64,000 nucleotides of DNA, taken from positions 352,030 through 416,029 of the IMG/VR virus record IMGVR_UViG_3300027896_005002; one strand, written 5' to 3'. How positions within the stretch are numbered: the stretch's first letter is position 1; each line of letters starts with the position of its first letter. The position numbers and the translations under genes were made by a program. Shown here piece after piece: positions 18,296-61,900 of the stretch. The notes below the pieces were generated by a model. The model was not told where the DNA came from, ran no database searches, and worked only from the letters and a program-made list of their open reading frames with translations.

Positions 18296-18332
18296 AAAGA
18301 CATTCTCCCTTAATAGGTCGATGAATGTCTTT
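18296..18332 (-). promoter_or_regulatory. Kink-turn hairpin, copy 1
   Basis: Minus-strand RNA: AAAGACAUUC-AUC-GA-CCU-AUUA-AGG-GA-GAAUGUCUUU, i.e. 10-bp C-stem, 3-nt bulge, tandem G.A/A.G pairs and 3-bp NC-stem. Confidence 0.7.
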
Positions 18333-18363
18333 GAGGGATAAAAGAAGCAAGAATTATAAATTT

Positions 18364-19122
18364 TTAATCGTACATCTCACCTTCTCGATGTTGTGCTAAA
18401 GATTTAAGATCACTAATAAAATAACTGTCAACTTTTGAAATTTCAGGACCCCAGTCACCAGATCTTAGTACTGCTTTTTTATGTTCTTTTGTTGGAATAA
18501 CCATAAGAGTCATACCGTCAGGATCTACACCACCATGTGGTCCCTCACCAACAGAAAATAATTGTTTGGGATATTTCTTCTTCAACTTAATAATTCTATT
18601 TACCATTCTTTTAGGACTAGTATGTGACATATCAAAATCAAAAGTTTTTAAACCTTTTACTAATTTTTGATCAGCATCTTCTAATTCTTTATTTTCTTTT
18701 GTTAAAATACTAACAACAGTATTTTTACTATATTTCTTATATGAAAGTATAATTTCATTTCCATCTTTATTCCATGTTCTGACGCCAATATGGTAATCAG
18801 TTTTAGGTAATTTCTTACTTTTTCCATAATGTTCATTAAATTGTTTAAATAATTCTTTATATTTTCTTTTAGATTTATCTGGAAACGATTCACGTATTGC
18901 ATAATCTCCATCACCTTCAGGCTCATTTTGCAATAATGATTTAATAGATTCAGAATGTTCTTGCGTGTCTTCTCCAGAAACTTCACGTTTTGGTCTCGCA
19001 GTTAACCGTCTTTTACTTTTCCTATGTCTTTTTAAATAAGCCCTTTGTTCATCTAAAGACAAATCATCCCATTTTCTTGCTTCTTTAACAAATTCTGATT
19101 GAATTATAGCCAAATGTTTCAT
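18364..19122 (-). CDS. Hypothetical basic/charged protein
   Basis: 252-aa ORF with a strong AAGGAG SD; contains KWDDLSLDEQRAYLKRHRKSKRR; no recognisable family. Confidence 0.65.
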   Translation of the reverse strand: MKHLAIIQSEFVKEARKWDDLSLDEQRAYLKRHRKSKRRLTARPKREVSGEDTQEHSESIKSLLQNEPEGDGDYAIRESFPDKSKRKYKELFKQFNEHYGKSKKLPKTDYHIGVRTWNKDGNEIILSYKKYSKNTVVSILTKENKELEDADQKLVKGLKTFDFDMSHTSPKRMVNRIIKLKKKYPKQLFSVGEGPHGGVDPDGMTLMVIPTKEHKKAVLRSGDWGPEISKVDSYFISDLKSLAQHREGEMYD

Positions 19123-34656: not shown

Positions 34657-35377
34657 TTGTTTGTCCTGTTGGTATGTTGACTATATCAAGAGTTGATCTA
34701 TCATTTCTAATAGCACCTGGTGTTGGAACAGTTGTAACATTAGTAAATGATAAAACTCTACCGGGATAAACTTCTTTTGTTACTTTGAATGTAAAATCAT
34801 ATTCAAGTTGATATGGTTTTTCTGCAATTTCATTAAGATTAAAACTATCAAAATATCCTCTATACACGGCATCGTCATAATTCATTACTACATAGCCTTG
34901 AGCAAGTATACGATTAGTTTTAGAATCATACAATGTTCCATTATTTCTATAAATCTGTACAAATTGTTCAAACGATTTAAAATTATCTGTGTCTCTACGA
35001 CCATCACTTGTTAATCCTAATTGACCGTAAAAACTTGCAGATTGTCCAGATGCTGATAATGAATCTAATTGTTCACCCCAATGTTCTTCAACAAAACCAG
35101 CCCAAGTTCTTTTATGATTAATTAATTGACTGTATTGTTCAGATAAATTATGTGGATTAATTTTCATTGTCAAATCTGGTAATGTATAACTACTTGGTAA
35201 TCCACCAATTTGCCAAATAATTAATTTTTTATTTCTAACTGTACCTTGTCTTACTTGACTAGGAATAGGAATACCTGAATATTGATCAAGATTCCTATTA
35301 AGTCTGATATCAGTTTCACTAATAGTATTTATCGTGTTTTGTAATCCAAAAATTGCATCACTTGTACTTATACCCAT
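34649..35377 (-). CDS. Tail tube initiator-like protein (paralogue 1)
   Basis: Aligns to the neighbour: GLTSDGRRDT/GLTTDGRKDT, IYRNNG in both, YDDAVYRGYF/YDDVIYRGSF. Confidence 0.65.
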   Translation of the reverse strand: MGISTSDAIFGLQNTINTISETDIRLNRNLDQYSGIPIPSQVRQGTVRNKKLIIWQIGGLPSSYTLPDLTMKINPHNLSEQYSQLINHKRTWAGFVEEHWGEQLDSLSASGQSASFYGQLGLTSDGRRDTDNFKSFEQFVQIYRNNGTLYDSKTNRILAQGYVVMNYDDAVYRGYFDSFNLNEIAEKPYQLEYDFTFKVTKEVYPGRVLSFTNVTTVPTPGAIRNDRSTLDIVNIPTGQTNG

Positions 35378-38034
35378 TAAGCACCTACCGTTTTCTCATC
35401 ATACAAAACTCTATAGATTATTTGCTCAATTTCTTGTCTGTCGCGCTGATTAATATTAAGTGTAATATGATTTGTTATTGCTGGCCTTGTATCTACAGCC
35501 TTGGCAACACCACCGCCTCCTTTAAGCATAGACATTAATGTATTTAAATTATTAATGCCAGCTTTTTGTGTTGCATCTTTATCAAAAACATACTCATTTT
35601 TATGAACTGCACCTGCAATATCATTATCAGATCCTGTACCAGTATATCCACCACGTGCATAACCTGCACCTTTTACTACTGGTGTATTTGGACGAGCAGC
35701 AGCAGCCATTCCCTCTGATGCAGCTAATTCTCGACCAGTCATTGTACTTCTATTAACTTCTATTGTTTTAATATCGACAGGCTTTTGCTTCTTTTCAAGT
35801 CCAAAAAATTTTGTAAGATTTTCAATTGCTTCAGCAGCAGATGCTAATAAAGGACCCATTGTGTTTGTCAACCAATCATAAATTTGTTCTATTACTTGCC
35901 AAATTTTTTCTTGTATAGATGTTAATGCAGCTCTTGTACCCATTTCAATTATATGAGCTTGTTCTTTTTCCTTTTTTCTTAATTCCTTAGCTTGTTCTGC
36001 ACCAATTTGTGTTCCAATACCTTCAAATTTTTTACCACTTTTAGAAAATTGCTCTATTAATCGTAATACTCCAGGTGATATTCCTATTGTTGGCATCAAT
36101 TTATTAAGTTCAAATCTATGTGATTCAATTGCTTCTCCAAGTTTATCAGGAATAATTTTGCCAAATTTATCTATAGTTCCACTTAAAAGACCACCGCTTG
36201 CTTTAATCATTGCTTTAACTTGTGCTTCAATTCGCGGTCCCACATCCATTTTCTCAAATTCATTTAATAATGTAGATGCAGATTTTCCAATAGCACCATT
36301 TGTACTCAATTGCATAACTAAAACTTTTTGAGTATCAGTCATTGTGTTAACACTATTTAACATTTCAGTTGCAAGTTGTTCAGCTTGTTTTTGCGGCATC
36401 TTAAGACCCTTTGTCAAGTCTCTAAATGAAGCAGAAACTTGAGTTATATCATTGCCATATATAGCTAAACCTTGAGCAGCATTCATGACATTTGAATAAA
36501 ATCTTGATGTTGTTATGCCTGCTTCTTTAGCATCATTTTTCATTATAACAAAAGTATCAGTAATTTGTTGACCCGTTTTCTTAAATTCATTTCTAAGATC
36601 ACCAGCTTCAGATGCAACCTCTTCAAAAGATTGACCGGTTATTGTACCAATTTGTTCAATATCTGCCATAAATTCTTTAAAATTATGTCTTGCAGTTTTT
36701 TGTGTAATATCAAGTGCAAAACCAGCTTTAGTTAATGCTTCAACATTTTTTACTGCATCTTCATATGTCATTCCAACTTCATTATAAAGACCTCTTAATG
36801 ATTCTCTAAATGCATTAGCTTGACCAACTGCACCTTTATCAATTGCATCTCCCAATTTGCCAAATCCTATAGACCCTGATGCTGCTAATTTTAAAATATT
36901 CTTCTGTGCAGTTTTAATCTCTTTATTAAAATTCAACAACATCATAATAGCAGTTGCAATTCCACCCAATGCCATTAATGGTCCCGCAAGCTTTCCTGCT
37001 ACAGTCATTAATTCACCACCCACATATCCTGCAGCTCCTGCTCCTGGACCACCACCAGCAACAACACCAGCTGCAACTCCTCTACCAGCGCTTTTAACAG
37101 CTTGTCGTTTTTCTTCCTTCAATATTTTTTTACGTTCAAAAAATCCAATACCTTGTTGTTTAAGTAATAATCCATGTAACTTTATTTCATTAAGTTGATC
37201 TTTTAGATCTTCTTTCTTCATCTTTCTAGTTTTCTTGTATAAATCAAATTGCTTTTTCTCAAATTTTGATTGCTTTTCATTAAGCGGTAGCATCTGCTTT
37301 GCTCGTTTTAATCTCTCTTTTTCAGTTAATTCTGGATGAGTTTTTTGCATTTCTTCAGCTAATTTTTCTTGCATTGCTTTGCGCTGTTTTATAATATCAT
37401 TCATCTCAGTATTTAATTCATTTAATCTATCACTAGATCTTTCCTCTTCTTGTGAAACATCCAAAGCAGACTTATCCAGATCTTTTATATCACTTTTAAT
37501 TTTTAATTTACTTTTATTTAATTGTGATAATTTATCCTCTAATTCATTACTGCGTTTTTTCAATTTATTTTCATTTTCAATATCAGTTGTTAATTTCTTA
37601 TTTAAAACACCTTCTAATTTTTTAATTTTTAATGCATCTTCATCAGAATCTGTCCCATTTTCTTTAAGCTCCTGTATCTTCTGTTGAATCTTAATTAATT
37701 CATCTTCTGTTGCTTTTCTAGTTTCTATAGCTTTATTAGTATCAACTTCCAACATTTTATTTTCAATATTCAATTTTTTAATCTGATCTACAACCAACTT
37801 ATGTTTACCTTTGGTTTTAGTAATATTGTCAGCAATGGCACTCTGCTTATCTAATATAGTCGAATGTTCTTTCTGTAATTTCAATAAATCTTTTTGAGTT
37901 TTCATCCATTTTGGATCAATCTCTACAGAACGTAACCCTTCAGTTATTTGTTTACTCAATTCCTGCATTTTTTGTTTGTCAATTTTACCAAAATTGACAT
38001 CAACAGTCATTGATGCATCACTGTTCCGTGCCAT
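35377..38034 (-). CDS. Tape measure protein
   Basis: Long coiled coil, a hydrophobic Gly/Ala stretch and the C-terminal GYARGGYTG....AGAVHKNEYV motif; canonical position after chaperones. Confidence 0.85.
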   Translation of the reverse strand: MARNSDASMTVDVNFGKIDKQKMQELSKQITEGLRSVEIDPKWMKTQKDLLKLQKEHSTILDKQSAIADNITKTKGKHKLVVDQIKKLNIENKMLEVDTNKAIETRKATEDELIKIQQKIQELKENGTDSDEDALKIKKLEGVLNKKLTTDIENENKLKKRSNELEDKLSQLNKSKLKIKSDIKDLDKSALDVSQEEERSSDRLNELNTEMNDIIKQRKAMQEKLAEEMQKTHPELTEKERLKRAKQMLPLNEKQSKFEKKQFDLYKKTRKMKKEDLKDQLNEIKLHGLLLKQQGIGFFERKKILKEEKRQAVKSAGRGVAAGVVAGGGPGAGAAGYVGGELMTVAGKLAGPLMALGGIATAIMMLLNFNKEIKTAQKNILKLAASGSIGFGKLGDAIDKGAVGQANAFRESLRGLYNEVGMTYEDAVKNVEALTKAGFALDITQKTARHNFKEFMADIEQIGTITGQSFEEVASEAGDLRNEFKKTGQQITDTFVIMKNDAKEAGITTSRFYSNVMNAAQGLAIYGNDITQVSASFRDLTKGLKMPQKQAEQLATEMLNSVNTMTDTQKVLVMQLSTNGAIGKSASTLLNEFEKMDVGPRIEAQVKAMIKASGGLLSGTIDKFGKIIPDKLGEAIESHRFELNKLMPTIGISPGVLRLIEQFSKSGKKFEGIGTQIGAEQAKELRKKEKEQAHIIEMGTRAALTSIQEKIWQVIEQIYDWLTNTMGPLLASAAEAIENLTKFFGLEKKQKPVDIKTIEVNRSTMTGRELAASEGMAAAARPNTPVVKGAGYARGGYTGTGSDNDIAGAVHKNEYVFDKDATQKAGINNLNTLMSMLKGGGGVAKAVDTRPAITNHITLNINQRDRQEIEQIIYRVLYDEKTVGA

Positions 38035-38431
38035 CTACAATCTCCGTTTGTTCAGTTCCTAATTTTTTGTCAATACTACTTTTAATCTTACCATCTAAGA
38101 TACAATATTCATTAAATAGCATTTCTACTAATTCATCACCAAAAGATAAAACAATTTGCCTCTTATCGTCAACAAATGATTTCGGATCTAATTTTACATC
38201 ATTTATAGCAATAATAGATCTTGCTATTGTTTCAACTTTTAATGTATGAGTAGCAGCATCAGCATCATTATATTTTGCACAACTTTCAAAAACATCTATT
38301 GTTTCTTGTGAGGTTAATGGTGCCAGTAATATTTTTACTTTGGCTATTTCTACTTGTCTTTCACTATAACCAAAAGATTCTAATGACTTTAATGCAGTTA
38401 ATGCATCTACAACTTTTTTAATTTGATTCAT
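38018..38431 (-). CDS. Tail assembly chaperone-like protein (paralogue 3)
   Basis: Likely start is the ATG at 38431 (SD AAGGA); LAPLTSQE...KVETIARSIIAIND motif. Confidence 0.65.
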   Translation of the reverse strand: MNQIKKVVDALTALKSLESFGYSERQVEIAKVKILLAPLTSQETIDVFESCAKYNDADAATHTLKVETIARSIIAINDVKLDPKSFVDDKRQIVLSFGDELVEMLFNEYCILDGKIKSSIDKKLGTEQTEIVDGTEQ

Positions 38432-38888
38432 TTGAATTTTCCTTTTTTTGTTCTTCTTTTTTAATCTGTTCTTCTTTTTTAATTTGATCTTCTTTATATC
38501 CAACAACATTTGTTTCTGCAGTCAATTTTATTTTTTCAAAATATTCATCAATATCACCAACCAATTTTGCATATTCTCTATACACATAATCAACCAATGT
38601 TTGTTGCCACTGTCCTATAACTGATTTTTTAATATTTATATCAATAGTTTCAGTCGACATTCCATTAATTTGCGTTATTGATCTACTTAATGTTTCAATC
38701 TTATGTTTATAGACAAATGCCTGTCCCCACGTATTCATACATTCAATAAAAGTAGCAGTTTCATCTTCTGCACCTAATGACTTTATTACTACTTCAAACT
38801 CATCACCAATTGTTACAGTTGCAGTCCGTTTTTCCAGTTCAGCTACAGCATTTAATGCATCTAAAGCACTATCAAACTTTTTTACCAT
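38418..38888 (-). CDS. Tail assembly chaperone-like protein (paralogue 2)
   Basis: Likely start is the ATG at 38888 (SD GGAGG); IKSLGAEDE...KIETLSRSITQING motif. Confidence 0.65.
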   Translation of the reverse strand: MVKKFDSALDALNAVAELEKRTATVTIGDEFEVVIKSLGAEDETATFIECMNTWGQAFVYKHKIETLSRSITQINGMSTETIDINIKKSVIGQWQQTLVDYVYREYAKLVGDIDEYFEKIKLTAETNVVGYKEDQIKKEEQIKKEEQKKENSNESN

Positions 38889-40251
38889 GATTAACCTCCA
38901 TATGAATTTCATCTAAATTTTGTTGTTTAATTTGTGATATCATATTCTCTTGTTCATTCTCAAATTTATTTTTTGCAGATTTATTTGTTAAAATACTATC
39001 CCTCATATTAAGCACTCGTTCTTTACTATCAGTAATCTTAGGATTTTTAAGTGATTCTATTATTTTCATTACCTCAGTTTTTTGATCTTCTTCCTCTTTA
39101 ATATATTGTTCAATAAAATTAGTTGTAGTTTCATCACTCTCATTTGCAACTTCATTTAATATACTATCTTTATTTTTCAACATTGAAAATGATGTTATAG
39201 TTACAATGTCTGAGTAATCTACTCCATTAATGAAATACTTATTTGATTTCATTTCTTCTTTAATATTTTCTGCAACTACATCATCACCTAATGTAGATAC
39301 CTGAATAAATCCAACGTTAATTCCTTTTGGCGCCTCTGGTAAATTAATAACTATTGCGTTAGATAATTTTTTCTCATGTAATATTTTTGCTCGACGTACA
39401 TTTTCTTTTTTGATTCTAAGTTCTTTATAGAATTGATATTCTTCATGTTCTCGAACTATTCTGTCATGTTCATCTTCAACAAACGCCTTTGTTAATATTT
39501 GTTGTACTCTACTATTTCGATCAAGAATAGATTCATCAGGTCTTTTCACTAAAGCATCAAATAATTCATCTGCTGTATTTTCTATCATAATTTTTCCATT
39601 TTCATTTTTTTGAATTTCTGCGCGCTCTTCACGTTCTAACTGTTCTTCCTGTAAAATTCTTTTCTTATTTTGAATTTGTTGCATTGCTTTTGGATTAACA
39701 AATGCACAAATACTATCTGTCATATATTCAACTCTAGCCCAATCAATTTTATTCTGATTTAATAAATCTTCTTGTTGATTTAAATAAATCCAAATTTGTT
39801 GAATATATGATATTCCTTTTGACTCAAATTCAGGATTACCAGTTATTACTGCACTATTAAGGGATGATTTAGTAGCTTTTAATACTGACCAATATAATCT
39901 TGAATCATCAGTTTTAACGAAATCATTGATAAGTTTGATTGCATTATGATAACGATTCATTAATTTCAAATATTGTTCAAAAACTTTTATAATTACTTGT
40001 TTTGGCCAGTCTTTTATTTTCTCTCTACAATCATTTATCTTACAACCATTAATTGAGTAGATCGATCTTTGAACGGTATCCATCGCTGCAAGTAAATTGT
40101 AATCATTATGTAAATCTTTATATGTTTCGACAATAAAAGATTCTTCAGATGCACACAGCGTTCTAATAACAATAATAAAATCATTACCGAACGTTAATGT
40201 CTCTTTTAAATAACCATCAAAAATTAACGCTTTAATATCATTAAATTTCAT
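38872..40251 (-). CDS. Chaperone-like N-terminal domain plus long helical extension (paralogue 1)
   Basis: IRTLCASEE...MDTVQRSIYSING motif. Start is uncertain; the track's 40320 ATG lies inside the K-turn hairpin. Confidence 0.55.
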   Translation of the reverse strand: MKFNDIKALIFDGYLKETLTFGNDFIIVIRTLCASEESFIVETYKDLHNDYNLLAAMDTVQRSIYSINGCKINDCREKIKDWPKQVIIKVFEQYLKLMNRYHNAIKLINDFVKTDDSRLYWSVLKATKSSLNSAVITGNPEFESKGISYIQQIWIYLNQQEDLLNQNKIDWARVEYMTDSICAFVNPKAMQQIQNKKRILQEEQLEREERAEIQKNENGKIMIENTADELFDALVKRPDESILDRNSRVQQILTKAFVEDEHDRIVREHEEYQFYKELRIKKENVRRAKILHEKKLSNAIVINLPEAPKGINVGFIQVSTLGDDVVAENIKEEMKSNKYFINGVDYSDIVTITSFSMLKNKDSILNEVANESDETTTNFIEQYIKEEEDQKTEVMKIIESLKNPKITDSKERVLNMRDSILTNKSAKNKFENEQENMISQIKQQNLDEIHMEVNHGKKV

Positions 40252-40271
40252 AGAATTTAAACCAACAAATT

Positions 40272-40286
40272 TTGTGAATGTAATTA
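40272..40286. repeat. 15-bp inverted-repeat arm (partner at 44249-44263)
   Basis: ttgtgaatgtaatta is the exact reverse complement of taattacattcacaa at 44249-44263. Confidence 0.8.
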
Positions 40287-40304
40287 GAGAAAAGAGAGGA
40301 ATTG

Positions 40305-40340
40305 AGGGCATTCTCCTCATTTAGAGTCAATGAATGCCCT
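40305..40340 (-). promoter_or_regulatory. Kink-turn hairpin, copy 2
   Basis: Minus-strand RNA: AGGGCAUUC-AUU-GA-CUC-UAAAU-GAG-GA-GAAUGCCCU, followed by a pyrimidine tract; 20 nt after the tube stop codon. Confidence 0.7.
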
Positions 40341-40360
40341 TGGAGGTTTCAAATATAAAT

Positions 40361-40999
40361 TTATGCCAACGATATCAATTTACTGATAGTAGTAGGATCA
40401 CGATCAACAAGTGTATCACCATAAGCACCGCGACCAGCAGCAGGATCATAAACATCAGTAATGTTTACTGCACAATCCTGCATAATCGTTGATGCACCAA
40501 TTTCAAATGTAATATTATAATCTTGCATCCAGCAACCTTCATAATAAGTCTGAATAATATTACCTGTCAGTCCACCTGTTTTACTTGTTCCTCTTTGTAC
40601 TGTATAGGATCCTGTGCCAATGAAATCAGGAACAATAATTTGTTCCTTAATATCAAAAGGCCAACGATGATGTTTCAATGACCGAATAATTCCTGAAGCA
40701 CCAGCATTATAACCAAGAACCTGCATAATATTTACAAGATACATTACAGCAATACTTAAAGAACCAGTTAAATCAGTGACACCAACTGATTGTTCAGCTG
40801 TTCTATCACCATGACCGATTCCTCTTACGGGTTCTGTCGGTCTTGATTGTGCCGGCGCCCAAGATTGTAGTAAACCAATTTGGTTTGCTGTAGGATCAGC
40901 TCCACCTGGATGAGCAGTAAATACTTTTACTTTTTGACTATTAAGTAAACTAGTATTTGGAGTAGATCCTTGTTGATAAATATAACTATTAGTAGCCAT
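40361..40999 (-). CDS. Tail tube protein
   Basis: IGLLQSW...SRPTEPVRGIG, GSLSI and YYEGCWMQDYNITF motifs; downstream of the sheath; strong GGAGG SD. Confidence 0.85.
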   Translation of the reverse strand: MATNSYIYQQGSTPNTSLLNSQKVKVFTAHPGGADPTANQIGLLQSWAPAQSRPTEPVRGIGHGDRTAEQSVGVTDLTGSLSIAVMYLVNIMQVLGYNAGASGIIRSLKHHRWPFDIKEQIIVPDFIGTGSYTVQRGTSKTGGLTGNIIQTYYEGCWMQDYNITFEIGASTIMQDCAVNITDVYDPAAGRGAYGDTLVDRDPTTISKLISLA

Positions 41000-41021
41000 T
41001 TGAACCCTCCATTATTATAAA

Positions 41022-41390
41022 TTAATCGTCTAACATTGCCTTTTTTATTTCATCAACCATTTTTTCATCTTCATTACTAAATGTCGTTAATACTGGATCA
41101 ATCATTTCCCCGGCTTCGTCAGCAGTAACAGATGATTCCATGTCCTTAACAGGTTCCATTTTCGGTACAACACCTTTTGGTTGACCAGGTGTTTGTTCAA
41201 AATCATGTCTTGGCGAATTAAACCTGTCAGTATTTATTGCATCATATAAATAATTATCTGAATCTAATTTAATCGGCTTTTCTTCAAATCGATCAACATC
41301 ACCAGGTAATGACCAAAATTTATCTTCATCACCTAAGTGAGGTTGATCTCTTTGTAAAACATTACCATAATAAGACGCCGACTTTTTCAT
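41022..41390 (-). CDS. Acidic hypothetical protein between sheath and tube
   Basis: 122-aa ORF starting immediately after the sheath stop (TAA ATG). Confidence 0.6.
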   Translation of the reverse strand: MKKSASYYGNVLQRDQPHLGDEDKFWSLPGDVDRFEEKPIKLDSDNYLYDAINTDRFNSPRHDFEQTPGQPKGVVPKMEPVKDMESSVTADEAGEMIDPVLTTFSNEDEKMVDEIKKAMLDD

Positions 41391-44162
41391 TTAGAGTTTT
41401 GCTCTAATATTAAATGTCACTCTAATATATGATAATTCAAATACTGGCTTATAGAAAGCTTCAGCTACTAAATAGTTAGGATCAGTGTCTGACGGTGTAG
41501 CTGTAACATTTGTATAATCAGAAATAATTTCAGCTTCCTTAAGAGCTGATAATGTTGCAGCGAGAGTAGAAGCAACATTACTTGCAGTATTGGGTAAGAA
41601 TTTCTTACCAATATACTGATCAAGACTAGATCTAGCCTGAATTTGAACCTCATCCATAATTGTAACAATGTTCGGTGCTTTATTAAATGGGTTACTCATA
41701 TCAGTTGTTAAAGCATGACGAACTTTCAAAATTCCACTATCAGAAACAATTACTGTTATACCAGCAGAAGCAGTTTCATCCATTTCAATCTCATCCATAT
41801 CTCGAACTAACCGTTTGAATCCAGTAATTGTCTTTCTTGTCATAGGTTCTGCAACATCATATGCTGTAGTTACATTCAATCCTACAAGAGCGGCAGCAAT
41901 GTAACTACCATCAACAATATATTCAGATTCAACTCCTCGTTCATCAGTTAATCCAATTACAGCACCATCAGGATAAACTGCAACAATACGAGAATAACCT
42001 AAAGCTTTTGCATAAACTGCAGCATCTTGAGATTCGGTTCCTACAGCAAATCCAATAAAAGCAGTTCTTTCTGATCTTCGTCTTTCAGATGACATTGTAG
42101 CTAAGTTAGTCTTAAGTGCAGATATTACTGTAGCAGAAGTAGTAACAACATGAATTACTCGAGGTTTAATTCCATTAATCGGCTTTTCTGTCTCAGCTAA
42201 AGCTTCAATAAATGCTTCATCTGATGCTACATCCTGACCAGGTTCCTTTAAAACTTGTTTACACATAACAGCAACAGCACCATTAACCATCATTAAAAAT
42301 GCTGATAATGTAATTTGATTACTAATGTCCAAAGCACCATATTCATTAGTAATATCTTTAAATAGTGTAAATACTTTAGGCGTAAAATCTGTCTTTTGAT
42401 AATAATATGTGATGTAATATGTAGAACCTACTGAAGGTTCACGTCCACTTCTATCAAAAGTCTGAATATTTGTTACATCACCAACACCAGTGTTCAAAGT
42501 ATCAGAAACAATCAACCTTAATCCATACATAACATATTCTGGTCCTTGACAACTAGTTATTACAGCTGACGTTCCGGTCTTGAATGGACCTGCAATACCA
42601 GTACCAGGACCACCAGATCTTGTGCCAGGAATGTCATCATTATGACAATGAATTGTAATTGTGTCACCTGGTGAATATGTTCCATCTGGTGTAATAGTAA
42701 ATTGTAATCCTGTACGAGCATCAATATATGTACTTCCTGTTTTACCGGCACCATTAGATCCTAAAATATTAGTAGATGTAACAGCAAAAACAGTCGAACT
42801 TGAAAATTGAATTGTTACAACTTCGTCAACTGCTTTAGTTTTACTAGCTTTTAGATGCGCACCAGAAGCGTCCATAAAAGTCGGTGTAGGTGTAGTTGAA
42901 TATCCTGTAACCTTAGCATTAAATAATGAACCATTAGCTGAAGTACTAATCTTATATGTTCCAGTTCCTGCAGCACCTGCAATAACAACTTGTATTGCAT
43001 AAGATTCATCCATTAGCTGACTTCTCCAGTATGACACTTCAACTAAAGATCCACCACCAGGAATATTCTTCAAATATACTTTTCCTGTTTCACCATCAAC
43101 TCTTGTAACTGCAACTTGTGTACCATTTACATATACAGCTGCTTTTGTTGGGTCATCAGTAATAACATTGCGACCATTACCGTCAACAATTGGTAAATAT
43201 TTGACTGTTAAAACATTTTCAACACCGGTAAATTGTGACGAAACATCTTCTTTAATAATTCGATCATCAACTAACATTGTTGCAATCTGGTCTTCAAAAT
43301 AAATGGATCCAGAAGTATGCGTCATTACAGTTTCTAACACTCCAGCACCCCATTGTATCTTATTGCCATCAAGAACAACAAAATCAACACCTTCAACATA
43401 GTTTGCTAAATCTGGAGAATCACCAACTGAAACAACACTCGTTAATCCACTTTGCGGCAATAAATCAAAAGTATCAGCATATTGATTAAAGTAGTAAGTC
43501 AATGTTACTGTATCAGTTATTAATGGTGCAACAGCAAATGTTACAACACCATCAATACCATTAACATCAGAAACTGTAACAACTAAACCATTAACTTTTG
43601 CAACAACATCAGTAATAGTTGTTGTTGGAACACCACTACCTCGACCATCAACAATTGGTTTATGTGATGTATAAAATATTCTATTAGTTCCATTAGCTTG
43701 TGTCGATTCATCTTCATTATTGATCTTTGTATCAGTCAATTTGAAATAATAAGTAATTGCAACAAAATCAGTAGCTTTTGGAGGTAATTGAAGAGTTACA
43801 AGACCATTAAGACCATCAACTCTAACAACAGGTACTGGATTATTATTAACACTTGCAATTACATCAGATACTCTATTTGTTATGGTCCCAGTACCATCAC
43901 CAGTTACTATGGGATAATAAGTAACTTGAAATACCGTATTTAAACCATCAGCTTGTCCAGAAACATCTTCATTAGAATACTTGTTGTCGATATAAGCAGA
44001 TGATCCACGAACAACATCCTGATTCAACAACAATTTCTGTTCTTGACCTGTGCCAATAACAATAGGAATTCTTAATCCGCCAAGTAAACTTGCAACGTTC
44101 GGATCTAACAAAGTCCTATCATACACACCAGGCGCCAAATAACCGGAAACAAATGCTGCCAT
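41391..44162 (-). CDS. Contractile tail sheath protein with inserted surface modules
   Basis: N-terminal YLAPGVYDRT and C-terminal IVTIMDEV...YIGKK...ISDY..V.....AFYKPVFELSYIRVTFNI are classic sheath termini. Confidence 0.95.
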   Translation of the reverse strand: MAAFVSGYLAPGVYDRTLLDPNVASLLGGLRIPIVIGTGQEQKLLLNQDVVRGSSAYIDNKYSNEDVSGQADGLNTVFQVTYYPIVTGDGTGTITNRVSDVIASVNNNPVPVVRVDGLNGLVTLQLPPKATDFVAITYYFKLTDTKINNEDESTQANGTNRIFYTSHKPIVDGRGSGVPTTTITDVVAKVNGLVVTVSDVNGIDGVVTFAVAPLITDTVTLTYYFNQYADTFDLLPQSGLTSVVSVGDSPDLANYVEGVDFVVLDGNKIQWGAGVLETVMTHTSGSIYFEDQIATMLVDDRIIKEDVSSQFTGVENVLTVKYLPIVDGNGRNVITDDPTKAAVYVNGTQVAVTRVDGETGKVYLKNIPGGGSLVEVSYWRSQLMDESYAIQVVIAGAAGTGTYKISTSANGSLFNAKVTGYSTTPTPTFMDASGAHLKASKTKAVDEVVTIQFSSSTVFAVTSTNILGSNGAGKTGSTYIDARTGLQFTITPDGTYSPGDTITIHCHNDDIPGTRSGGPGTGIAGPFKTGTSAVITSCQGPEYVMYGLRLIVSDTLNTGVGDVTNIQTFDRSGREPSVGSTYYITYYYQKTDFTPKVFTLFKDITNEYGALDISNQITLSAFLMMVNGAVAVMCKQVLKEPGQDVASDEAFIEALAETEKPINGIKPRVIHVVTTSATVISALKTNLATMSSERRRSERTAFIGFAVGTESQDAAVYAKALGYSRIVAVYPDGAVIGLTDERGVESEYIVDGSYIAAALVGLNVTTAYDVAEPMTRKTITGFKRLVRDMDEIEMDETASAGITVIVSDSGILKVRHALTTDMSNPFNKAPNIVTIMDEVQIQARSSLDQYIGKKFLPNTASNVASTLAATLSALKEAEIISDYTNVTATPSDTDPNYLVAEAFYKPVFELSYIRVTFNIRAKL

Positions 44163-44248
44163 AGTAATTTCCTTTCACAAAATATATACAATAACTTTTG
44201 TTTTACAGCAATGAATTTAATTTTAATGAATTTTAATTTAATTAATCT

Positions 44249-44263
44249 TAATTACATTCACAA
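44249..44263. repeat. 15-bp inverted-repeat arm (partner at 40272-40286)
   Basis: taattacattcacaa in the sheath upstream intergenic region. Confidence 0.8.
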
Positions 44264-44275
44264 CAATAAGGCAGG

Positions 44276-44300
44276 ATTATAAATCATACAGTAAATGGTC
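44276..44300 (-). promoter_or_regulatory. Candidate promoter for the sheath-tube cassette
   Basis: Two TATAAT hexamers, one within TTTATATAAT, in a 165-bp AT-rich gap. No convincing -35 or BRE, and such motifs arise easily at this AT content. Confidence 0.3.
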
Positions 44301-44327
44301 ATTATATAAAACAAATATTAAATCAAA

Positions 44328-45467
44328 TTAAGAAATATTTGTCGCTTGCCAAGTTGTTTCTACGCCAACATTATTAAAAACTTTTTCAATATTTATTTTC
44401 TTTAAAACGAATCTCCACTGTGGCGATGTTGGAAATAAAGCTCCTGTTATATACACATTAATTCTCATATTAAACGGAGAACTTGTGTATTGTTCAACAG
44501 TATATCTGGCAATGTTAGTTCCATCATTATACGGCAATGGTATAAAACAATCACTGGTCGTATGAGTTGTATTCCTTTGTACCATTGCTGCAACTACTAC
44601 AAAACTATCCCATGTTAAACTAACATCTAAATCAAACCACGCACCACTATTTAACGACGCATTTAAATAAACATATTCTCCAGTATTAATCATTATCCCA
44701 TTATATAAAACATTGCCATAAGAATCAATTGAAAAATTACCTATCTGTGGAATAACTTGTCTAAAATCAACTATGTCAGCTGCAAGAATATTTGGATTAC
44801 CACTATGTCTGTGAATTTCAGCAAGTTTGTAATAACGATGATAAACACTATTAGCATCTAAACCATCTACTGGAATTGATGTTGTTCCTTCAGCCACTAA
44901 CACATCTTGAACAATTCTAAATCTATTAGCAGACTGTACATTCAAAGTTGCATCTTTTATAGTAGTATCATGATATTCGCTACCGGCTTCTGAACTAACT
45001 TCTGCCAGATAAGTATCAACATATACTGTATCTATACGGTCAGATCCTGGCACGCTAATTGTGGGTATGACTGTTGTAGTATAATTATCATCTTCTAATG
45101 TTCCCGATGTTCCTTGTTGATTATATTCTATACTACCAAATAACAATAATGGATAACCTTTAACTATTAACATTGCAGGTTGATCTGCTGATCCACCAGT
45201 TACTGTAAAATTACTAACAGTTGTAACTACGCTTTGTGATACTGACCAAGAATTTATACCAATAGCACCATCACCAATATTTGATTCAAGAAATCTTCTT
45301 ATAAAATCAAAACTTCTATAAGAAATTTCTGACAATTCATAATCTAATACTGCCTTACCTGTTTGTTCTGCAAACAAATACCTTCTTTTTGCTTTACTTT
45401 CTAATTTTGATATTGGTAGAGGAATATAAGAATATATTCCAATATATGAACCAGCAGGATTACTCAT
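44328..45467 (-). CDS. Hypothetical virion structural protein
   Basis: 379-aa beta-rich ORF with a good SD, upstream of the sheath. Confidence 0.55.
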   Translation of the reverse strand: MSNPAGSYIGIYSYIPLPISKLESKAKRRYLFAEQTGKAVLDYELSEISYRSFDFIRRFLESNIGDGAIGINSWSVSQSVVTTVSNFTVTGGSADQPAMLIVKGYPLLLFGSIEYNQQGTSGTLEDDNYTTTVIPTISVPGSDRIDTVYVDTYLAEVSSEAGSEYHDTTIKDATLNVQSANRFRIVQDVLVAEGTTSIPVDGLDANSVYHRYYKLAEIHRHSGNPNILAADIVDFRQVIPQIGNFSIDSYGNVLYNGIMINTGEYVYLNASLNSGAWFDLDVSLTWDSFVVVAAMVQRNTTHTTSDCFIPLPYNDGTNIARYTVEQYTSSPFNMRINVYITGALFPTSPQWRFVLKKINIEKVFNNVGVETTWQATNIS

Positions 45468-58958: not shown

Positions 58959-61900
58959 TTAAGTTACATATTGTACATATATTGTTCCATAAGGAATACC
59001 TGAAGTAGATGGTGGATCACCTGTTCCATAACGAATCGGTGCAACAACATTTGAAGTTCCTGCAACATCGCCTGTAATAGTAACAGAGTTAAATGATGGA
59101 TCAGTCCCAACATTTCCAGAATAACCAGAAATTCCACTATATCCTGACTTTCCTGAATAGCCTGACGTCCCTGAATATCCTGAATATCCTGATATGCCTG
59201 AATATCCACTTGTTCCTACACCTGAATAACCTGAAATACCCGAATATCCACTATAGCCTGATATACCTGAATATCCTGATGTTCCTACACCAGAATATCC
59301 TGATGTTCCTACACCAGAATATCCTGATGTTCCTACACCACTATATCCACTTTGTCCTGAATATCCCGATTGTCCTGAATAACCAGAAATCCCTGAATAT
59401 CCACTATAGCCTGATATACCTGAATATCCTGATATTCCTGAATAACCACTTTGTCCAGAATATCCCGATTGTCCTGAATAACCAGATGTACCTACACCAC
59501 TATAACCACTTTGTCCTGAATATCCTGAAGTTCCTACTCCAGAATAACCGCTCTGTCCAGAATAACCGCTCTGTCCAGAATATCCTGAAATGCCTGAATA
59601 TCCTGATGTTCCTACACCACTATATCCACTTTGTCCTGAATATCCTGAAATACCTGAATACCCTGAAGTTCCTACACCCGAATAACCTGATGTTCCAGAA
59701 TAACCACTTTGTCCTGAATAACCACTTTGTCCTGAATATCCTGAAATACCAGAATATCCTGAAAGACCTGTAGTAAGAGGACCAAATATTGATGAAGATG
59801 TACTACCTTCATATACGAAATGAATCTTTGTTGTGCTTGCACTACGTCCATATATTTTTACAACAATTTGATCTGTTACATTTAACCCATGTGATGACGA
59901 ATCATATTTATATACTACAAATTCTTGAGCACTTAATAAAGTAGTTGATGTTATAGCAGGTGATACTATTTCAAATAAAAGAGTTTCAGTTCCACTAGGA
60001 TATGCTCGGGTATAAACTTTTGCAACTACAAAATCTCCAGTTGAAACAGCATCTACATAACTCCATGCATGAAATACCCAATAGCCACTTGGTATGTAAG
60101 TTACAGTAGGATCACCATAAACAGTAACATAATTTTTAATCAAAATATCATCAGGCGGAGCAACAGTTCCAGAATCATCTTGTTGTCCTCCAGATGGAAT
60201 AGATCTATTAAGTTTATTGTATAATGGAAAAACAGTTACATTTTCAAAGAAAAATGTTGTCCCTACCAATCCACTGTAACCTGATGATCCTGAATAGCCG
60301 CTTTGACCTGAATATCCTGAAGTACCTGAATAACCAGATGTGCCTATACCAGAATATCCTGAAGCACCAGAATATCCTGAAGTACCTACACCAGAATATC
60401 CACTTTGTCCAGAATATCCTGATATGCCTGAATATCCTGAAGTTCCTACTCCAGAATATCCTGATTGTCCTGAATAACCAGATGTACCTACACCAGAATA
60501 ACCACTTTGTCCTGAATATCCAGATGTACCTGAATAGCCTGATGTTCCTACGCCAGAATAACCACTTTGTCCTGAATATCCTGACAAACCATCAATTCCA
60601 CTATATCCTGATATTCCAGAATAGCCTGATATTCCTACACCACTATATCCACTTTGTCCTGAATATCCCGATTGTCCTGAATAACCTGACGTTCCTACGC
60701 CAGAATAACCTGATGTTCCAGAATAACCTGACGTTCCTACGCCAGAATAACCACTTTGTCCTGAATATCCCGATTGTCCTGAATAACCTGATGTTCCTAT
60801 ACCCGAATAACCACTTTGTCCAGAATATCCTGACAAGCCATCAATTCCACTATAACCTGATATTCCTGAATAGCCACTTTGTCCCGAATATCCAGATACC
60901 CCACTATATCCTGAAGTGCCTGAATATCCACTTGTACCTATGCCTGAATAACCTGATATTCCTGAATATCCCGATGCACCATCAACTCCAATATAGCCTG
61001 ATGCTCCTGAATATCCTGACACTCCACTATATCCACTTTGACCTGAATAACCTGATGAACCACTATATCCTGATGTTCCTATTTGACCTGAATATCCTGA
61101 TATTCCTAGTGTACCATCAATTCCTGAATAACCAGATTTTCCACTATAACCACTAACTCCTGTTGTTGCAGTCAATTTGCCACTATATCCAGAAACACCA
61201 CCAGTAACTACTATTGTAGATCCATCTGCAATATTAGTCAAATTTACGTCTAATGTAATATCATTTATACCTGGTTGATCTACAACATAAAAATTGCTAG
61301 ATCCAGGTATTAAATTCTTAAATTGAAGATCAACACCTTGTTTTATTTTAAATAATCCAACTCCTCCTACTCCGACATTAGACGCAGTATTTGCTTCTCC
61401 AGTTCCTCCACCAACTCTACCTGAAAGAGTTCCAAATTTATTTGCATTAACGATCTGAGCTTCTAAAGGATCATTTAAATCTGTACAACCCTGTTTAACT
61501 ATTATCCAACATCTAAAAACATCTGCTGAATTAAAAGGATTTTGCGCAATCAATTTATTTGTAGCAGCTTGAGCATATGCTAAATCTGGATATACTACTT
61601 GACCGTATTGAAGATCATTTGCATCTTCTGGAGCATAAAGCGACATTGTTTGAATTGTCCAGCCTCCAGGTGTAATGTCAGACACAAGACCCAATCCCGA
61701 CCCTGTGTCATAATGTTCTGGATCTATGATTGTTGTCGGTGCTAAATCATTTACCCAAACACCAGGAGCTGATTGATAATAATATTGAAACGTCACTGGC
61801 TGTTCTGAAGCTGTAGGATAAATATTAGGTTGTTTTTTGTCAACAGTATAATATGTACCATTATCCCATACATGACCTTCTGATCGATCAATACTTAAAT

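What the first reader, a model, noticed from the sequence alone, without database searches (positions are those of the whole stretch)
40272..44263. 15-nt perfect complementarity bracketing the sheath-tube cassette
The sheath upstream region reads UUGUGAAUGUAAUUA and the region after the tube gene reads UAAUUACAUUCACAA on the same strand (seen). The duplex extends by 3 bp on each side with single-nt bulges. It could close a ~4-kb mRNA holding the two highest-copy tail genes, with the K-turn just inside the 3' arm, resembling the processing stems around rRNAs (RNase III or archaeal-type). Alternatives are a DNA operator or an inversion site. A rough estimate gives tens of chance 15-mer inverted matches in 64 kb at this AT content, so the support is that both arms flank one cassette outside well-supported coding sequence.
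Basis: partly seen in the sequence, partly recalled or inferred. Interest (0 to 1): 0.65.

Follow-up and report, generated by a model that had tools for sequence, protein, structure and literature searches.

The report
Conserved RNA stem bracketing sheath-tube genes
Two short complementary sequences 4 kb apart flank the tail sheath and tube genes of a giant phage, and related phages keep them complementary by matching mutations on both sides, so they most likely pair in the RNA to close off the message for the two most abundant tail proteins.

Summary
TTGTGAATGTAATTA (window 44263..44249, minus strand) and its exact reverse complement (40286..40272) flank the sheath, a 122-aa ORF and the tube of a 416-kb jumbo phage.

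In this genome alone the match is not remarkable: 18 inverted 15-mer matches are seen in the window and 17-22 are expected. The support comes from relatives.

Four lineages in two separated clades (WIN; L059, L002, L057) carry the same helix with both-sided compensatory changes at six columns. Other lineages have different helices between the same two regions: L011/L024 (12 bp), L062 (14 bp) and L058 (8+6 bp). Unrelated non-cognate combinations never score as high (312 pairs, maximum 14.9 against 14.5-16.5). Excluding the window, the combined p is 4e-4. About half of the lineages lack a helix.

A conserved kink-turn hairpin (7 of 11 pairs covary) lies next to the 3' arm.

The best reading is a selected long-range RNA helix closing the sheath-tube message. 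A role in RNase III-type processing or in clamping the ends is inferred, not shown. No RNA data exist and the transcription start is unknown. DNA inversion, a repeated motif and pure chance are disfavoured.

The parts
44249..44263 (-). 5' arm of the long-range helix (RNA sense UUGUGAAUGUAAUUA), 87-101 nt upstream of the sheath start codon. It aligns with the Cys-Glu-Cys codons at the 3' end of a small zinc-ribbon gene that relatives carry here.
40272..40286 (-). 3' arm of the helix (UAAUUACAUUCACAA), 75 nt after the tube stop codon, 29 nt after the K-turn hairpin, and ending 21 nt before the likely start (ATG 40251) of the next gene.
44246..44267 (-). Full 5' side of the duplex including the two 3-bp extensions and the bulged G44264.
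40269..40290 (-). Full 3' side of the duplex including the two 3-bp extensions and the bulged C40287.
40315..40340 (-). Kink-turn hairpin: 8-bp C-stem GGGCAUUC/GAAUGCCC, 3-nt bulge AUU, tandem G.A/A.G, short NC stem and loop. In this phage it is followed by a pyrimidine-rich tract with only a weak U-run.
   Evidence: 11 pairs, 7 with compensatory changes, invariant AUUGA/GA loop in 14 lineages
41391..44162 (-). Tail sheath gene (923 aa), first gene inside the bracket.
   Evidence: phrog_2839 tail sheath 4e-26; PF17482
41022..41390 (-). 122-aa ORF of unknown function between sheath and tube, present at this position in all relatives.
40361..40999 (-). Probable tail tube gene (212 aa), last gene inside the bracket. 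It is very conserved (mean column identity 90% across 11 relatives).
   Evidence: The tube identity is inferred from position, size and conservation; only a weak phrog_985 'virion structural protein' hit supports it.
44264..44327 (-). Non-coding stretch that aligns with the 3' part of the relatives' zinc-ribbon gene, so probably a decayed remnant of it.
38872..40251 (-). Downstream gene (about 459 aa from the homologous start), followed by a 164-aa ORF and the tape measure protein. It lies outside the bracket.

Best explanation
The two arms are the two halves of a long-range RNA helix under selection. On a late transcript that runs from upstream of the sheath leader through the tube gene, the 5' arm pairs with the 3' arm. 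The 5' arm is about 100 nt upstream of the sheath start; in relatives it lies inside the last codons of a small upstream zinc-ribbon gene. The 3' arm lies in the tube-downstream spacer beside a conserved K-turn hairpin. The pairing closes the roughly 4-kb sheath / 122-aa ORF / tube segment into one loop.

Shown: the complementarity, its maintenance by compensatory substitutions, its recurrence at the same two regions with different sequences, and the RNA-level conservation of the neighbouring hairpin.

Inferred: the duplex (15 bp plus two 3-bp extensions here, 12-14 bp in relatives) serves as a double-stranded processing or stability element. It would be cut by a host RNase III-type enzyme, or would simply hold the 5' and 3' ends together. 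Either way the message for the two most abundant tail proteins is set apart from its low-copy neighbours. The K-turn hairpin is possibly bound by an L7Ae-type protein.

My odds: about 0.7 that the pairing is a selected RNA helix, and about 0.3-0.35 that its role is processing or stabilisation as described.
For: (1) Column-by-column comparison of WIN, L059, L002 and L057. Six helix columns change on both sides (T-A/C-G at columns 1, 7, 10 and 11; A-T/G-C at columns 8 and 9, with a G.U intermediate in L002). The five-column GAAUG core (columns 2-6) is invariant. The only non-pairs sit at the edges (L002 A.A at column -2, L057 C.A at column 10, L059 C.U at column 11). The flanks outside the helix are unrelated.

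(2) A synonymous TGT>TGC change in the upstream Cys codon of L057 is matched by A>G in its downstream arm.

(3) WIN's 5' arm ends in AAUUA where relatives have GGCC, and WIN's 3' arm reads UAAUU where they have GGCC/GGUC.

(4) Other lineages have different helices between the same two regions: L011/L024 12 bp, kept identical while their flanks diverged; L062 14 bp; L058 8+6 bp with a 4-nt bulge.

(5) Null of 312 unrelated non-cognate upstream x downstream combinations: mean 10.7, maximum 14.9. Cognate scores are 16.5 (clade A), 15.1 (L062) and 14.5 (clade B). Fisher combined p is 4e-4 and the binomial p is 9e-4, both without WIN.

(6) The sheath tree puts WIN with L058, away from the L057/L059/L002 clade, so the shared helix spans deep divergence.

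(7) Co-folding the two flanks puts the long-range helix in the minimum-energy structure in 6 of 8 lineages.

(8) The adjacent hairpin covaries as RNA on the same strand.

(9) The placement fits cis pairing. Where the 3' arm follows the hairpin, the U-run is weak (longest run 2-4). Where the U-run is stronger, the arm precedes the hairpin or is absent (Mann-Whitney p 0.002, not corrected for phylogeny).

(10) Precedents: B. subtilis RNase III targets are mostly long-range intramolecular duplexes (PMC11780869); the icaR 5'-3' UTR duplex is cut by RNase III (PMC3868564); rRNA flanking stems (PMC6582327).
Against: No transcript data exist. The only run holding this DNA is a DNA run from the probable source sample.

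The transcription start is unknown. A conserved AGAUU(C/A)A motif lies just downstream of the 5' arm. If it is the sheath promoter, only read-through transcripts would carry the arm.

Five or six of eleven lineages show no convincing helix: L001/L012, L003, L009/L025, L010/L061, L016/L063, with L029 weak. The element is therefore dispensable or has been replaced by something I did not detect.

The helices of relatives (12-14 bp) are shorter than the roughly two helical turns usual for RNase III substrates. The duplex is AU-rich in this phage (3 G-C of 15). In relatives the 5' arm is inside translated sequence, so ribosomes would open it.

The phage record (77% complete) has no RNase III or L7Ae gene.

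The covariation rests on four lineages only, and the arms were picked as the best-pairing segments, which flatters the edges.
Confidence: 0.5

Rival explanations
1. It is an RNA helix, but with a different job. It could be a regulatory pairing that shuts off or destabilises the upstream zinc-ribbon gene once the cassette has been transcribed. Or it could tune translation or re-initiation of the downstream gene, whose start lies 20-60 nt after the 3' arm. It would not be a processing or stability clamp for the sheath-tube message.
For: In seven lineages the 5' arm lies inside the last 10-20 codons of the zinc-ribbon gene. The 3' arm sits in the leader of the downstream gene. The icaR precedent shows that a 3'-to-5' pairing can control translation (PMC3868564).
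Against: In this phage the zinc-ribbon gene is gone, yet the helix is kept and is the longest of all. The arms do not cover the ribosome-binding site of the sheath or of the downstream gene.
Confidence: 0.17
2. It is chance. A 15-mer inverted match is expected many times in an AT-rich 64-kb window, and the helices in relatives are likewise coincidences or shared ancestry.
For: 18 observed against 17-22 expected 15-mer inverted matches in the window. Half of the lineages lack a helix. The energy-based score does not separate cognate from non-cognate pairs.
Against: The intergenic-restricted expectation is 0.15-0.21 per genome. There are six both-sided compensatory columns. Three independent lineages beyond WIN exceed 98-99.7% of 312 unrelated combinations, and they do so at concordant positions.
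Confidence: 0.1
3. It is a mutational by-product. Template switching or short-patch conversion between two pre-existing short inverted repeats during phage replication or recombination keeps copying one arm onto the other. This would give perfect complementarity without any function.
For: Such correction of quasi-palindromes is an established mutational process (general knowledge). WIN's arm is perfect over 15 nt even where the sequence is new (AAUUA/UAAUU). The genome has an excess of intergenic inverted pairs.
Against: The arms are 4 kb apart, far beyond the usual range of such events. The repeats are only 12-15 nt. A G.U pair (L002) and edge mismatches show that the two sides are not simply copied. 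Different lineages pair different segments of the same two regions, which looks like selection for pairing rather than copying.
Confidence: 0.1
4. It is a DNA-level element: two inverted binding sites for a DNA-looping regulator, or crossover sites of an invertible segment.
For: Inverted repeats flank a discrete cassette. Each arm lies a short way upstream of an AGATT-type motif that resembles a -10 box. One other inverted pair in the genome (139149/143108) is clearly a shared upstream motif of two opposed genes.
Against: The cassette has the same orientation in all 19 related loci, and the source run's contig is collinear with no inverted joint. No serine recombinase is found in the record. 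The sequence is not a repeated motif. The arm sequences differ between lineages while staying complementary, which a conserved DNA-binding protein would not require.
Confidence: 0.08

Closest known systems
RNase III processing stems flanking 16S and 23S rRNA in bacterial rRNA operons (PMC6582327)
   Same: Complementary sequences kilobases apart on one transcript bracket a highly expressed product. The pairing is kept by compensatory changes. The loop size (about 4 kb) is comparable with that of 23S rRNA (about 2.9 kb).
   Different: Here the enclosed RNA is a translated three-gene mRNA. The helix is short (12-21 bp against much longer rRNA stems). Cleavage is not shown, and the element is missing in about half of the relatives.
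Long-range intramolecular RNase III targets in B. subtilis mRNAs (PMC11780869)
   Same: These are mRNA duplexes formed between distant segments of one message.
   Different: Those span hundreds of nucleotides, not 4 kb, and have mapped cleavage sites. Here nothing is mapped.
icaR mRNA 5'-3' UTR pairing in Staphylococcus aureus (PMC3868564)
   Same: A 3' untranslated segment next to a terminator hairpin pairs with the 5' region of the same mRNA and forms an RNase III substrate.
   Different: In icaR the pairing covers the Shine-Dalgarno sequence and represses translation of one gene. Here the 5' arm is about 100 nt upstream of the sheath ribosome-binding site and the loop holds three genes.
Kink-turn (K-turn) RNA motifs bound by L7Ae-family proteins
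   Same: The hairpin next to the 3' arm has a C-stem, a 3-nt bulge, tandem G.A/A.G pairs and an NC-stem in the canonical order. The loop is invariant and the stems covary.
   Different: It sits in a terminator-like position after a phage structural gene. No L7Ae-family gene is found in the phage record, and binding is untested.
Invertible DNA segments of phages (Mu G segment, P1 C segment; general knowledge)
   Same: Short inverted repeats flank a tail-gene cassette of about 3-4 kb, and in relatives one repeat lies inside a coding sequence.
   Different: There is no invertase gene, only one orientation in all loci, the cassette holds sheath and tube rather than alternative fibre genes, and the arm sequences are not conserved.

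Membership tests
Long-range RNase III processing stem (rRNA-operon type) | Complementary segments flank the product on the same strand | tested here: met
Long-range RNase III processing stem (rRNA-operon type) | Pairing is maintained by compensatory substitutions in relatives | tested here: met
   Six both-sided columns in four lineages. Alternative helices occur in three more lineages. The helix is absent in 5-6 lineages.
Long-range RNase III processing stem (rRNA-operon type) | Duplex of about two helical turns (20 bp or more) | tested here: inconclusive
   WIN has 15 bp plus 3+3 bp with two bulges, 21 bp in all. Relatives have 12-14 contiguous bp with weak extensions.
Long-range RNase III processing stem (rRNA-operon type) | Both arms lie on one transcript and are cut by RNase III | not testable with these tools
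   No RNA run holds the sequence. No RNase III gene is in the phage record, so a host enzyme would be needed.
icaR-type 5'-3' UTR translational control | The 3' segment pairs with the Shine-Dalgarno region of the regulated gene | tested here: not met
   The 5' arm ends 87 nt upstream of the sheath ATG, whereas the ribosome-binding site GAAAGGA is 8-14 nt upstream.
Archaeal bulge-helix-bulge processing stem | Two 3-nt bulges on opposite strands separated by a 4-bp helix | tested here: not met
   The duplex is 15 contiguous bp flanked by single-nt bulges. Ribosome-binding sites are of the bacterial AAAGGAG type.
Site-specific invertible DNA segment | A recombinase gene is present and both orientations are found | tested here: not met
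   No PF00239 match in the record. All 19 related loci and the source run's contig show a single orientation.
Repeated regulatory DNA motif (promoter or operator) | Multiple copies in the genome at equivalent positions | tested here: not met
   Only the two copies exist at up to 1 mismatch in 416 kb.
Kink-turn hairpin | C-stem, 3-nt bulge, tandem sheared G.A/A.G, NC-stem in canonical order, with stems supported by covariation | tested here: met
   This is tested at sequence level only; the kinked fold and protein binding are not testable here.
Intrinsic (rho-independent) terminator | G+C-rich hairpin directly followed by a U-run | tested here: inconclusive
   The consensus scan did not call it in WIN, and its tail UCAAUUCC is weak. 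Relatives range from weak tails to 8 U.

The most novel reading that the evidence does not exclude
A clade of uncultivated jumbo phages closes the messenger RNA of its sheath and tube genes into a 4-kb loop. It does so with a short long-range helix that sits beside a conserved K-turn hairpin. Together these form a protein-bound junction that defines, stabilises or pseudo-circularises the message for the two highest-copy tail proteins. A second, smaller copy of the same module (helix plus K-turn hairpin) brackets another late gene in the same window. This would be a new way for a phage to set structural-protein stoichiometry after transcription.
Probability: 0.25. Interest if true: 0.8.

Novelty: new variant of a known kind. 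Interest (0 to 1): 0.62.

Why it matters
Phages must make hundreds of sheath and tube subunits for every few copies of neighbouring tail proteins, and for most phages it is unclear how that ratio is set within one late operon. A covariation-supported helix that ties the two ends of the sheath-tube message together, next to a K-turn hairpin, would be a concrete and testable post-transcriptional mechanism. It would extend kilobase-range 'processing stem' architecture from rRNA to a translated phage mRNA. It also shows that a match which single-genome statistics would dismiss as chance can be rescued by comparative analysis.

Tried and rejected
(1) Whole-window inverted-repeat count: no excess. 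This correctly shows that the match is not significant on its own.

(2) blastn of the region against GenBank phages: no match.

(3) Unconstrained RNAduplex of 200-nt flanks: every combination gives -35 to -60 kcal/mol through loop-rich duplexes, so it does not discriminate. A 26-nt windowed duplex energy is also confounded by the G+C-rich hairpin stem. The near-contiguous helix score was used instead.

(4) Sigma-70 promoter and terminator consensus scan: fewer promoter-like sites than in shuffles, and the hairpin was not called.

(5) Rfam: only sub-threshold noise.

(6) Sequencing runs: a single DNA run, probably the source, and no RNA. Its contig is collinear, with no inversion joint at the arms. 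The one 'letters between' row joins 44204 to 41915 in a 222-nt low-depth contig and does not involve the arms.

(7) AGATTNA as a genome-wide promoter motif: not enriched, 12 of 233 upstream regions. CCAGAATA turned out to be a coding repeat. The late promoter was not found.

(8) Testing whether other bracketing pairs in the genome are conserved. The gene bracketed by the 7005/7482 pair has homologues in two relatives, but without intergenic space. The 126425/129257 cassette has no homologue in five relatives.

(9) The distant GC-rich clade (L030-L054) has a sheath tightly coupled to an upstream ORF, so it is not comparable.

(11) The treekit run gave no answer and was replaced by MAFFT plus FastTree.

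(12) The zinc-ribbon protein matched no Pfam or PHROG family.

(13) The formal pair-counting tool was not used on the long-range helix, because the two arms cannot be given as one reference. The table was computed in a script instead.


Full report
SETTING. The window is the last 64 kb of a 416,029-bp IMG/VR virus record (linear, estimated 77% complete, 31% G+C). The region of interest is a myovirus tail module on the minus strand:

- a 379-aa ORF (45467..44328);
- the tail sheath (44162..41391, 923 aa; phrog_2839 4e-26, PF17482);
- a 122-aa ORF (41390..41022);
- a 212-aa protein that I take to be the tube (40999..40361), on the basis of position, size and extreme conservation;
- a 482-aa ORF (40320..38872);
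- a 164-aa ORF;
- the tape measure protein (38034..35377).

Ribosome-binding sites are of the bacterial AAAGGAG type.

THE OBSERVATION. In RNA sense (minus strand) the 5' arm is 44263..44249, 87-101 nt upstream of the sheath ATG. The 3' arm is 40286..40272, 75 nt after the tube stop. The two 3-bp extensions across single-nucleotide bulges also hold.

The 3' arm lies inside the longest ORF 38872..40320. Homologues in relatives start at the position of ATG 40251, so the arm is in that gene's leader.

CHANCE WITHIN THIS GENOME. The window has 18 inverted 15-mer matches and Markov simulations give 17-22.

With a crude gene map (549 ORFs, 9.2% intergenic), perfect inverted pairs of 15 nt or more with both arms intergenic and 60-10,000 nt apart are expected 0.15-0.21 times in the whole genome. 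Five are observed, and none of 900 simulations reached five. This pair is the shortest of the five.

Of the other four, one is a shared upstream motif of two opposed genes, one is a 91-nt-spaced pair, and two bracket same-strand genes. I could not test those two in relatives.

The arm is not a repeated motif. The genome has only these two copies at up to one mismatch.

RELATIVES. Protein-guided searches gave 19 loci (about 11 independent lineages) that span both the sheath-upstream and the tube-downstream regions. Their sheath identity to the window is 63-76%. No closer relative exists in the collections apart from identical contigs.

The exact arms occur only in the window's own phage, so by sequence the arms are not conserved.

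I scored the best near-contiguous helix between the 250 nt upstream of the sheath ATG and the 200 nt downstream of the tube stop. Several lineages then showed their own helix at the same offsets:

| Locus | Upstream arm | Downstream arm | Offsets (up / down) |
|---|---|---|---|
| L059 | TTGCGAATGTGGC | GCCACATTCGCAA | -130 / +99 |
| L002 | TGCGAATGTGGCC | GGTCACATTCGCA (one G.U) | -110 / +96 |
| L057 | ATTGCGAATGCGG | CCGCATTCGCAAT | -115 / +105 |
| L011, L024 | AAGTGACGTGAA | TTCACGTCACTT | about -130 / +80 |
| L062 | 14 bp including two G.U | | -128 / +2 |
| L058 | 8+6 Watson-Crick pairs across a 4-nt bulge | | 3' arm directly after the tube stop |

COVARIATION. WIN, L059, L002 and L057 share one helix. 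I aligned them on the invariant GAAUG core.

- Six columns change on both sides: T-A to C-G at columns 1, 7, 10 and 11, and A-T to G-C at columns 8 and 9. L002 has a G.U at column 9.
- One further column pairs only in WIN.
- The only non-pairs are at the edges.
- Outside the helix the two flanks are unrelated.

In the relatives the 5' arm is the Cys-Glu-Cys-Gly codons near the 3' end of a small (89-96 aa) zinc-ribbon-like gene that ends just upstream of the sheath leader. A synonymous TGT>TGC change in L057 is matched in its 3' arm.

The window's phage has lost that gene. No homologue is found in the record, and the 165-nt gap aligns with the gene's 3' part. Its 5' arm now ends in AAUUA where relatives have GGCC, and its 3' arm reads UAAUU accordingly.

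The sheath tree places WIN with L058, apart from the L057/L059/L002 clade, which is sister to L011/L024. The shared helix is therefore old, or has moved with the flanks by recombination. In L011 and L024 the arms are islands of identity in diverged surroundings.

STATISTICS ACROSS LINEAGES. The null is 312 combinations of an upstream region with the downstream region of an unrelated lineage. It has mean 10.7, sd 1.3 and maximum 14.9. Cognate scores are 16.5 (WIN), 16.5 (clade A), 15.1 (L062) and 14.5 (clade B).

Leaving WIN out, because it prompted the question, three of ten lineages have an empirical p of 0.013 or less (binomial 9e-4; Fisher 4e-4).

Five or six lineages show nothing convincing: L001/L012, L003 and L010/L061, which lack the zinc-ribbon gene here, plus L009/L025 and L016/L063, with L029 weak.

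THE NEIGHBOURING HAIRPIN. Between the tube stop and the 3' arm lies a hairpin (40340..40315) with these parts:

- an 8-bp stem;
- a 3-nt bulge AUU;
- tandem G.A/A.G pairs;
- a short inner stem.

That is the canonical K-turn order. In 14 lineages the AUUGA/GA loop is invariant, and 7 of 11 stem pairs show compensatory changes.

Its U-run is weak where a 3' arm follows it (longest run 2-4). It is stronger where the arm precedes it (L058, L062) or is absent (4-8). This gives Mann-Whitney p 0.002, uncorrected for phylogeny. That is what cis pairing would need, because the 3' arm must be on the transcript, but it is only suggestive.

PLAUSIBILITY OF FOLDING. Co-folding the two flanks puts the long-range helix in the minimum-energy structure in WIN, L002, L057, L011, L024 and L062, but not in L059 or L058. 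The whole 4-kb RNA could not be folded with the tools.

WHAT COULD NOT BE SETTLED. There is no RNA evidence. The only holder is a DNA run, probably the source, whose contig is collinear.

I could not place the sheath promoter. A TGATTATA extended -10-like motif marks about 30 other genes but not this one. A conserved AGAUU(C/A)A motif lies just downstream of the 5' arm and again just upstream of the downstream gene, but it is not a genome-wide signal. If it is a promoter, only read-through transcripts carry the 5' arm.

The phage record has no RNase III, L7Ae or serine recombinase gene.

INTERPRETATION. Complementarity is kept while sequence changes. Different segments of the same two regions pair in different lineages. 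There is a G.U intermediate. The orientation is fixed in all loci. Together these point to base pairing in RNA rather than to a DNA site, an inversion system or a repeated motif.

The most economical function is a double-stranded element that marks off or stabilises the sheath-tube message. This is by analogy with rRNA processing stems (PMC6582327), long-range RNase III targets in B. subtilis mRNAs (PMC11780869) and the icaR 5'-3' duplex (PMC3868564). That functional step is inference.

The archaeal-type reading is not supported: there is no bulge-helix-bulge motif, and translation signals are bacterial. One relative's contig is filed in a Nitrosarchaeum bin, which I take to be a binning artefact, though I did not test this.

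VERDICT. This is a new variant of a known kind of element, found in only part of a clade of uncultivated jumbo phages, and its function is unproven.

Noticed in passing
window 18298-18330 (-), with 18341-18353 (-) and 19074-19086 (-): A second hairpin of the same family: the same CCCUCAA lead-in, stem AGACAUUC/GAAUGUCU, AUC-GA/GA K-turn loop, and CCUCUC tail. It follows a 252-aa late gene. A perfect 13-bp helix (AAAGAAGCAAGAA / UUCUUGCUUCUUU) joins the first codons of that gene to the spot right after its stop, just before the hairpin. Against random same-strand 800-nt chunks p is about 0.04, and the 5' word is a common coding word (4 copies in the genome), so this is only suggestive.
   Followed up: partly
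G000 7005-7021 / 7482-7498; 126425-126440 / 129257-129272; 139149-139166 / 143108-143125; 275967-275984 / 276058-276075: Four other perfect inverted pairs (16-18 nt) between intergenic regions, where about 0.2 are expected genome-wide. Two bracket same-strand genes (one 143-aa gene; a nine-gene cassette). One is a shared upstream motif (AAAAAACTGTTGATTATA) of two opposed genes. Conservation could not be tested.
   Followed up: partly
window 44264-44327 (-); L057:1509-1778, L059:2638-2907, L058:2601-2891, L062:2625-2894: Relatives carry a small zinc-ribbon-like gene (89-96 aa, C-terminus ..CxCGQKVIEY) directly upstream of the sheath. It matches no Pfam or PHROG family. The window's phage has only a decayed remnant and no homologue elsewhere in the record.
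   Followed up: partly
whole genome G000; in the window for example 2021, 6185, 8108, 13840, 15531 (-): TGATTATA(A/T) lies 13-50 nt upstream of about 30 start codons, usually followed by ATAGGAG. It looks like an extended -10 promoter of early or middle genes. None precedes the sheath.
   Followed up: partly
window 59116-63988 (+ strand words), overlapping the 1010-aa gene 58959-61991 (-): Dozens of copies of CCAGAATA at multiples of 6-18 nt indicate a highly repetitive coding region (a short peptide repeat). It was not examined.
   Followed up: no
window 18364-19122 (-), residues 1-50: The N-terminal roughly 45-50 residues of this 252-aa protein recur at the start of many otherwise different proteins in related phages (16 matches in one 330-kb relative, 11 in another). 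This looks like a shared N-terminal attachment or targeting domain.
   Followed up: no
window 38418-38912 and 38872-40320 (-): The gene after the tube and the following 164-aa ORF overlap by 41 nt just upstream of the tape measure gene. That is the position where tail assembly chaperones with a programmed frameshift are usual. Not examined.
   Followed up: no
P0009 / L058 (NCBI GCA_030650065.1 contig JAUSEY010000114.1): A 58.7-kb contig of a related phage is filed in a metagenome bin labelled Nitrosarchaeum sp. Given the bacterial-type ribosome-binding sites and terminators, this is probably a binning artefact, but the host of this clade is unknown.
   Followed up: no
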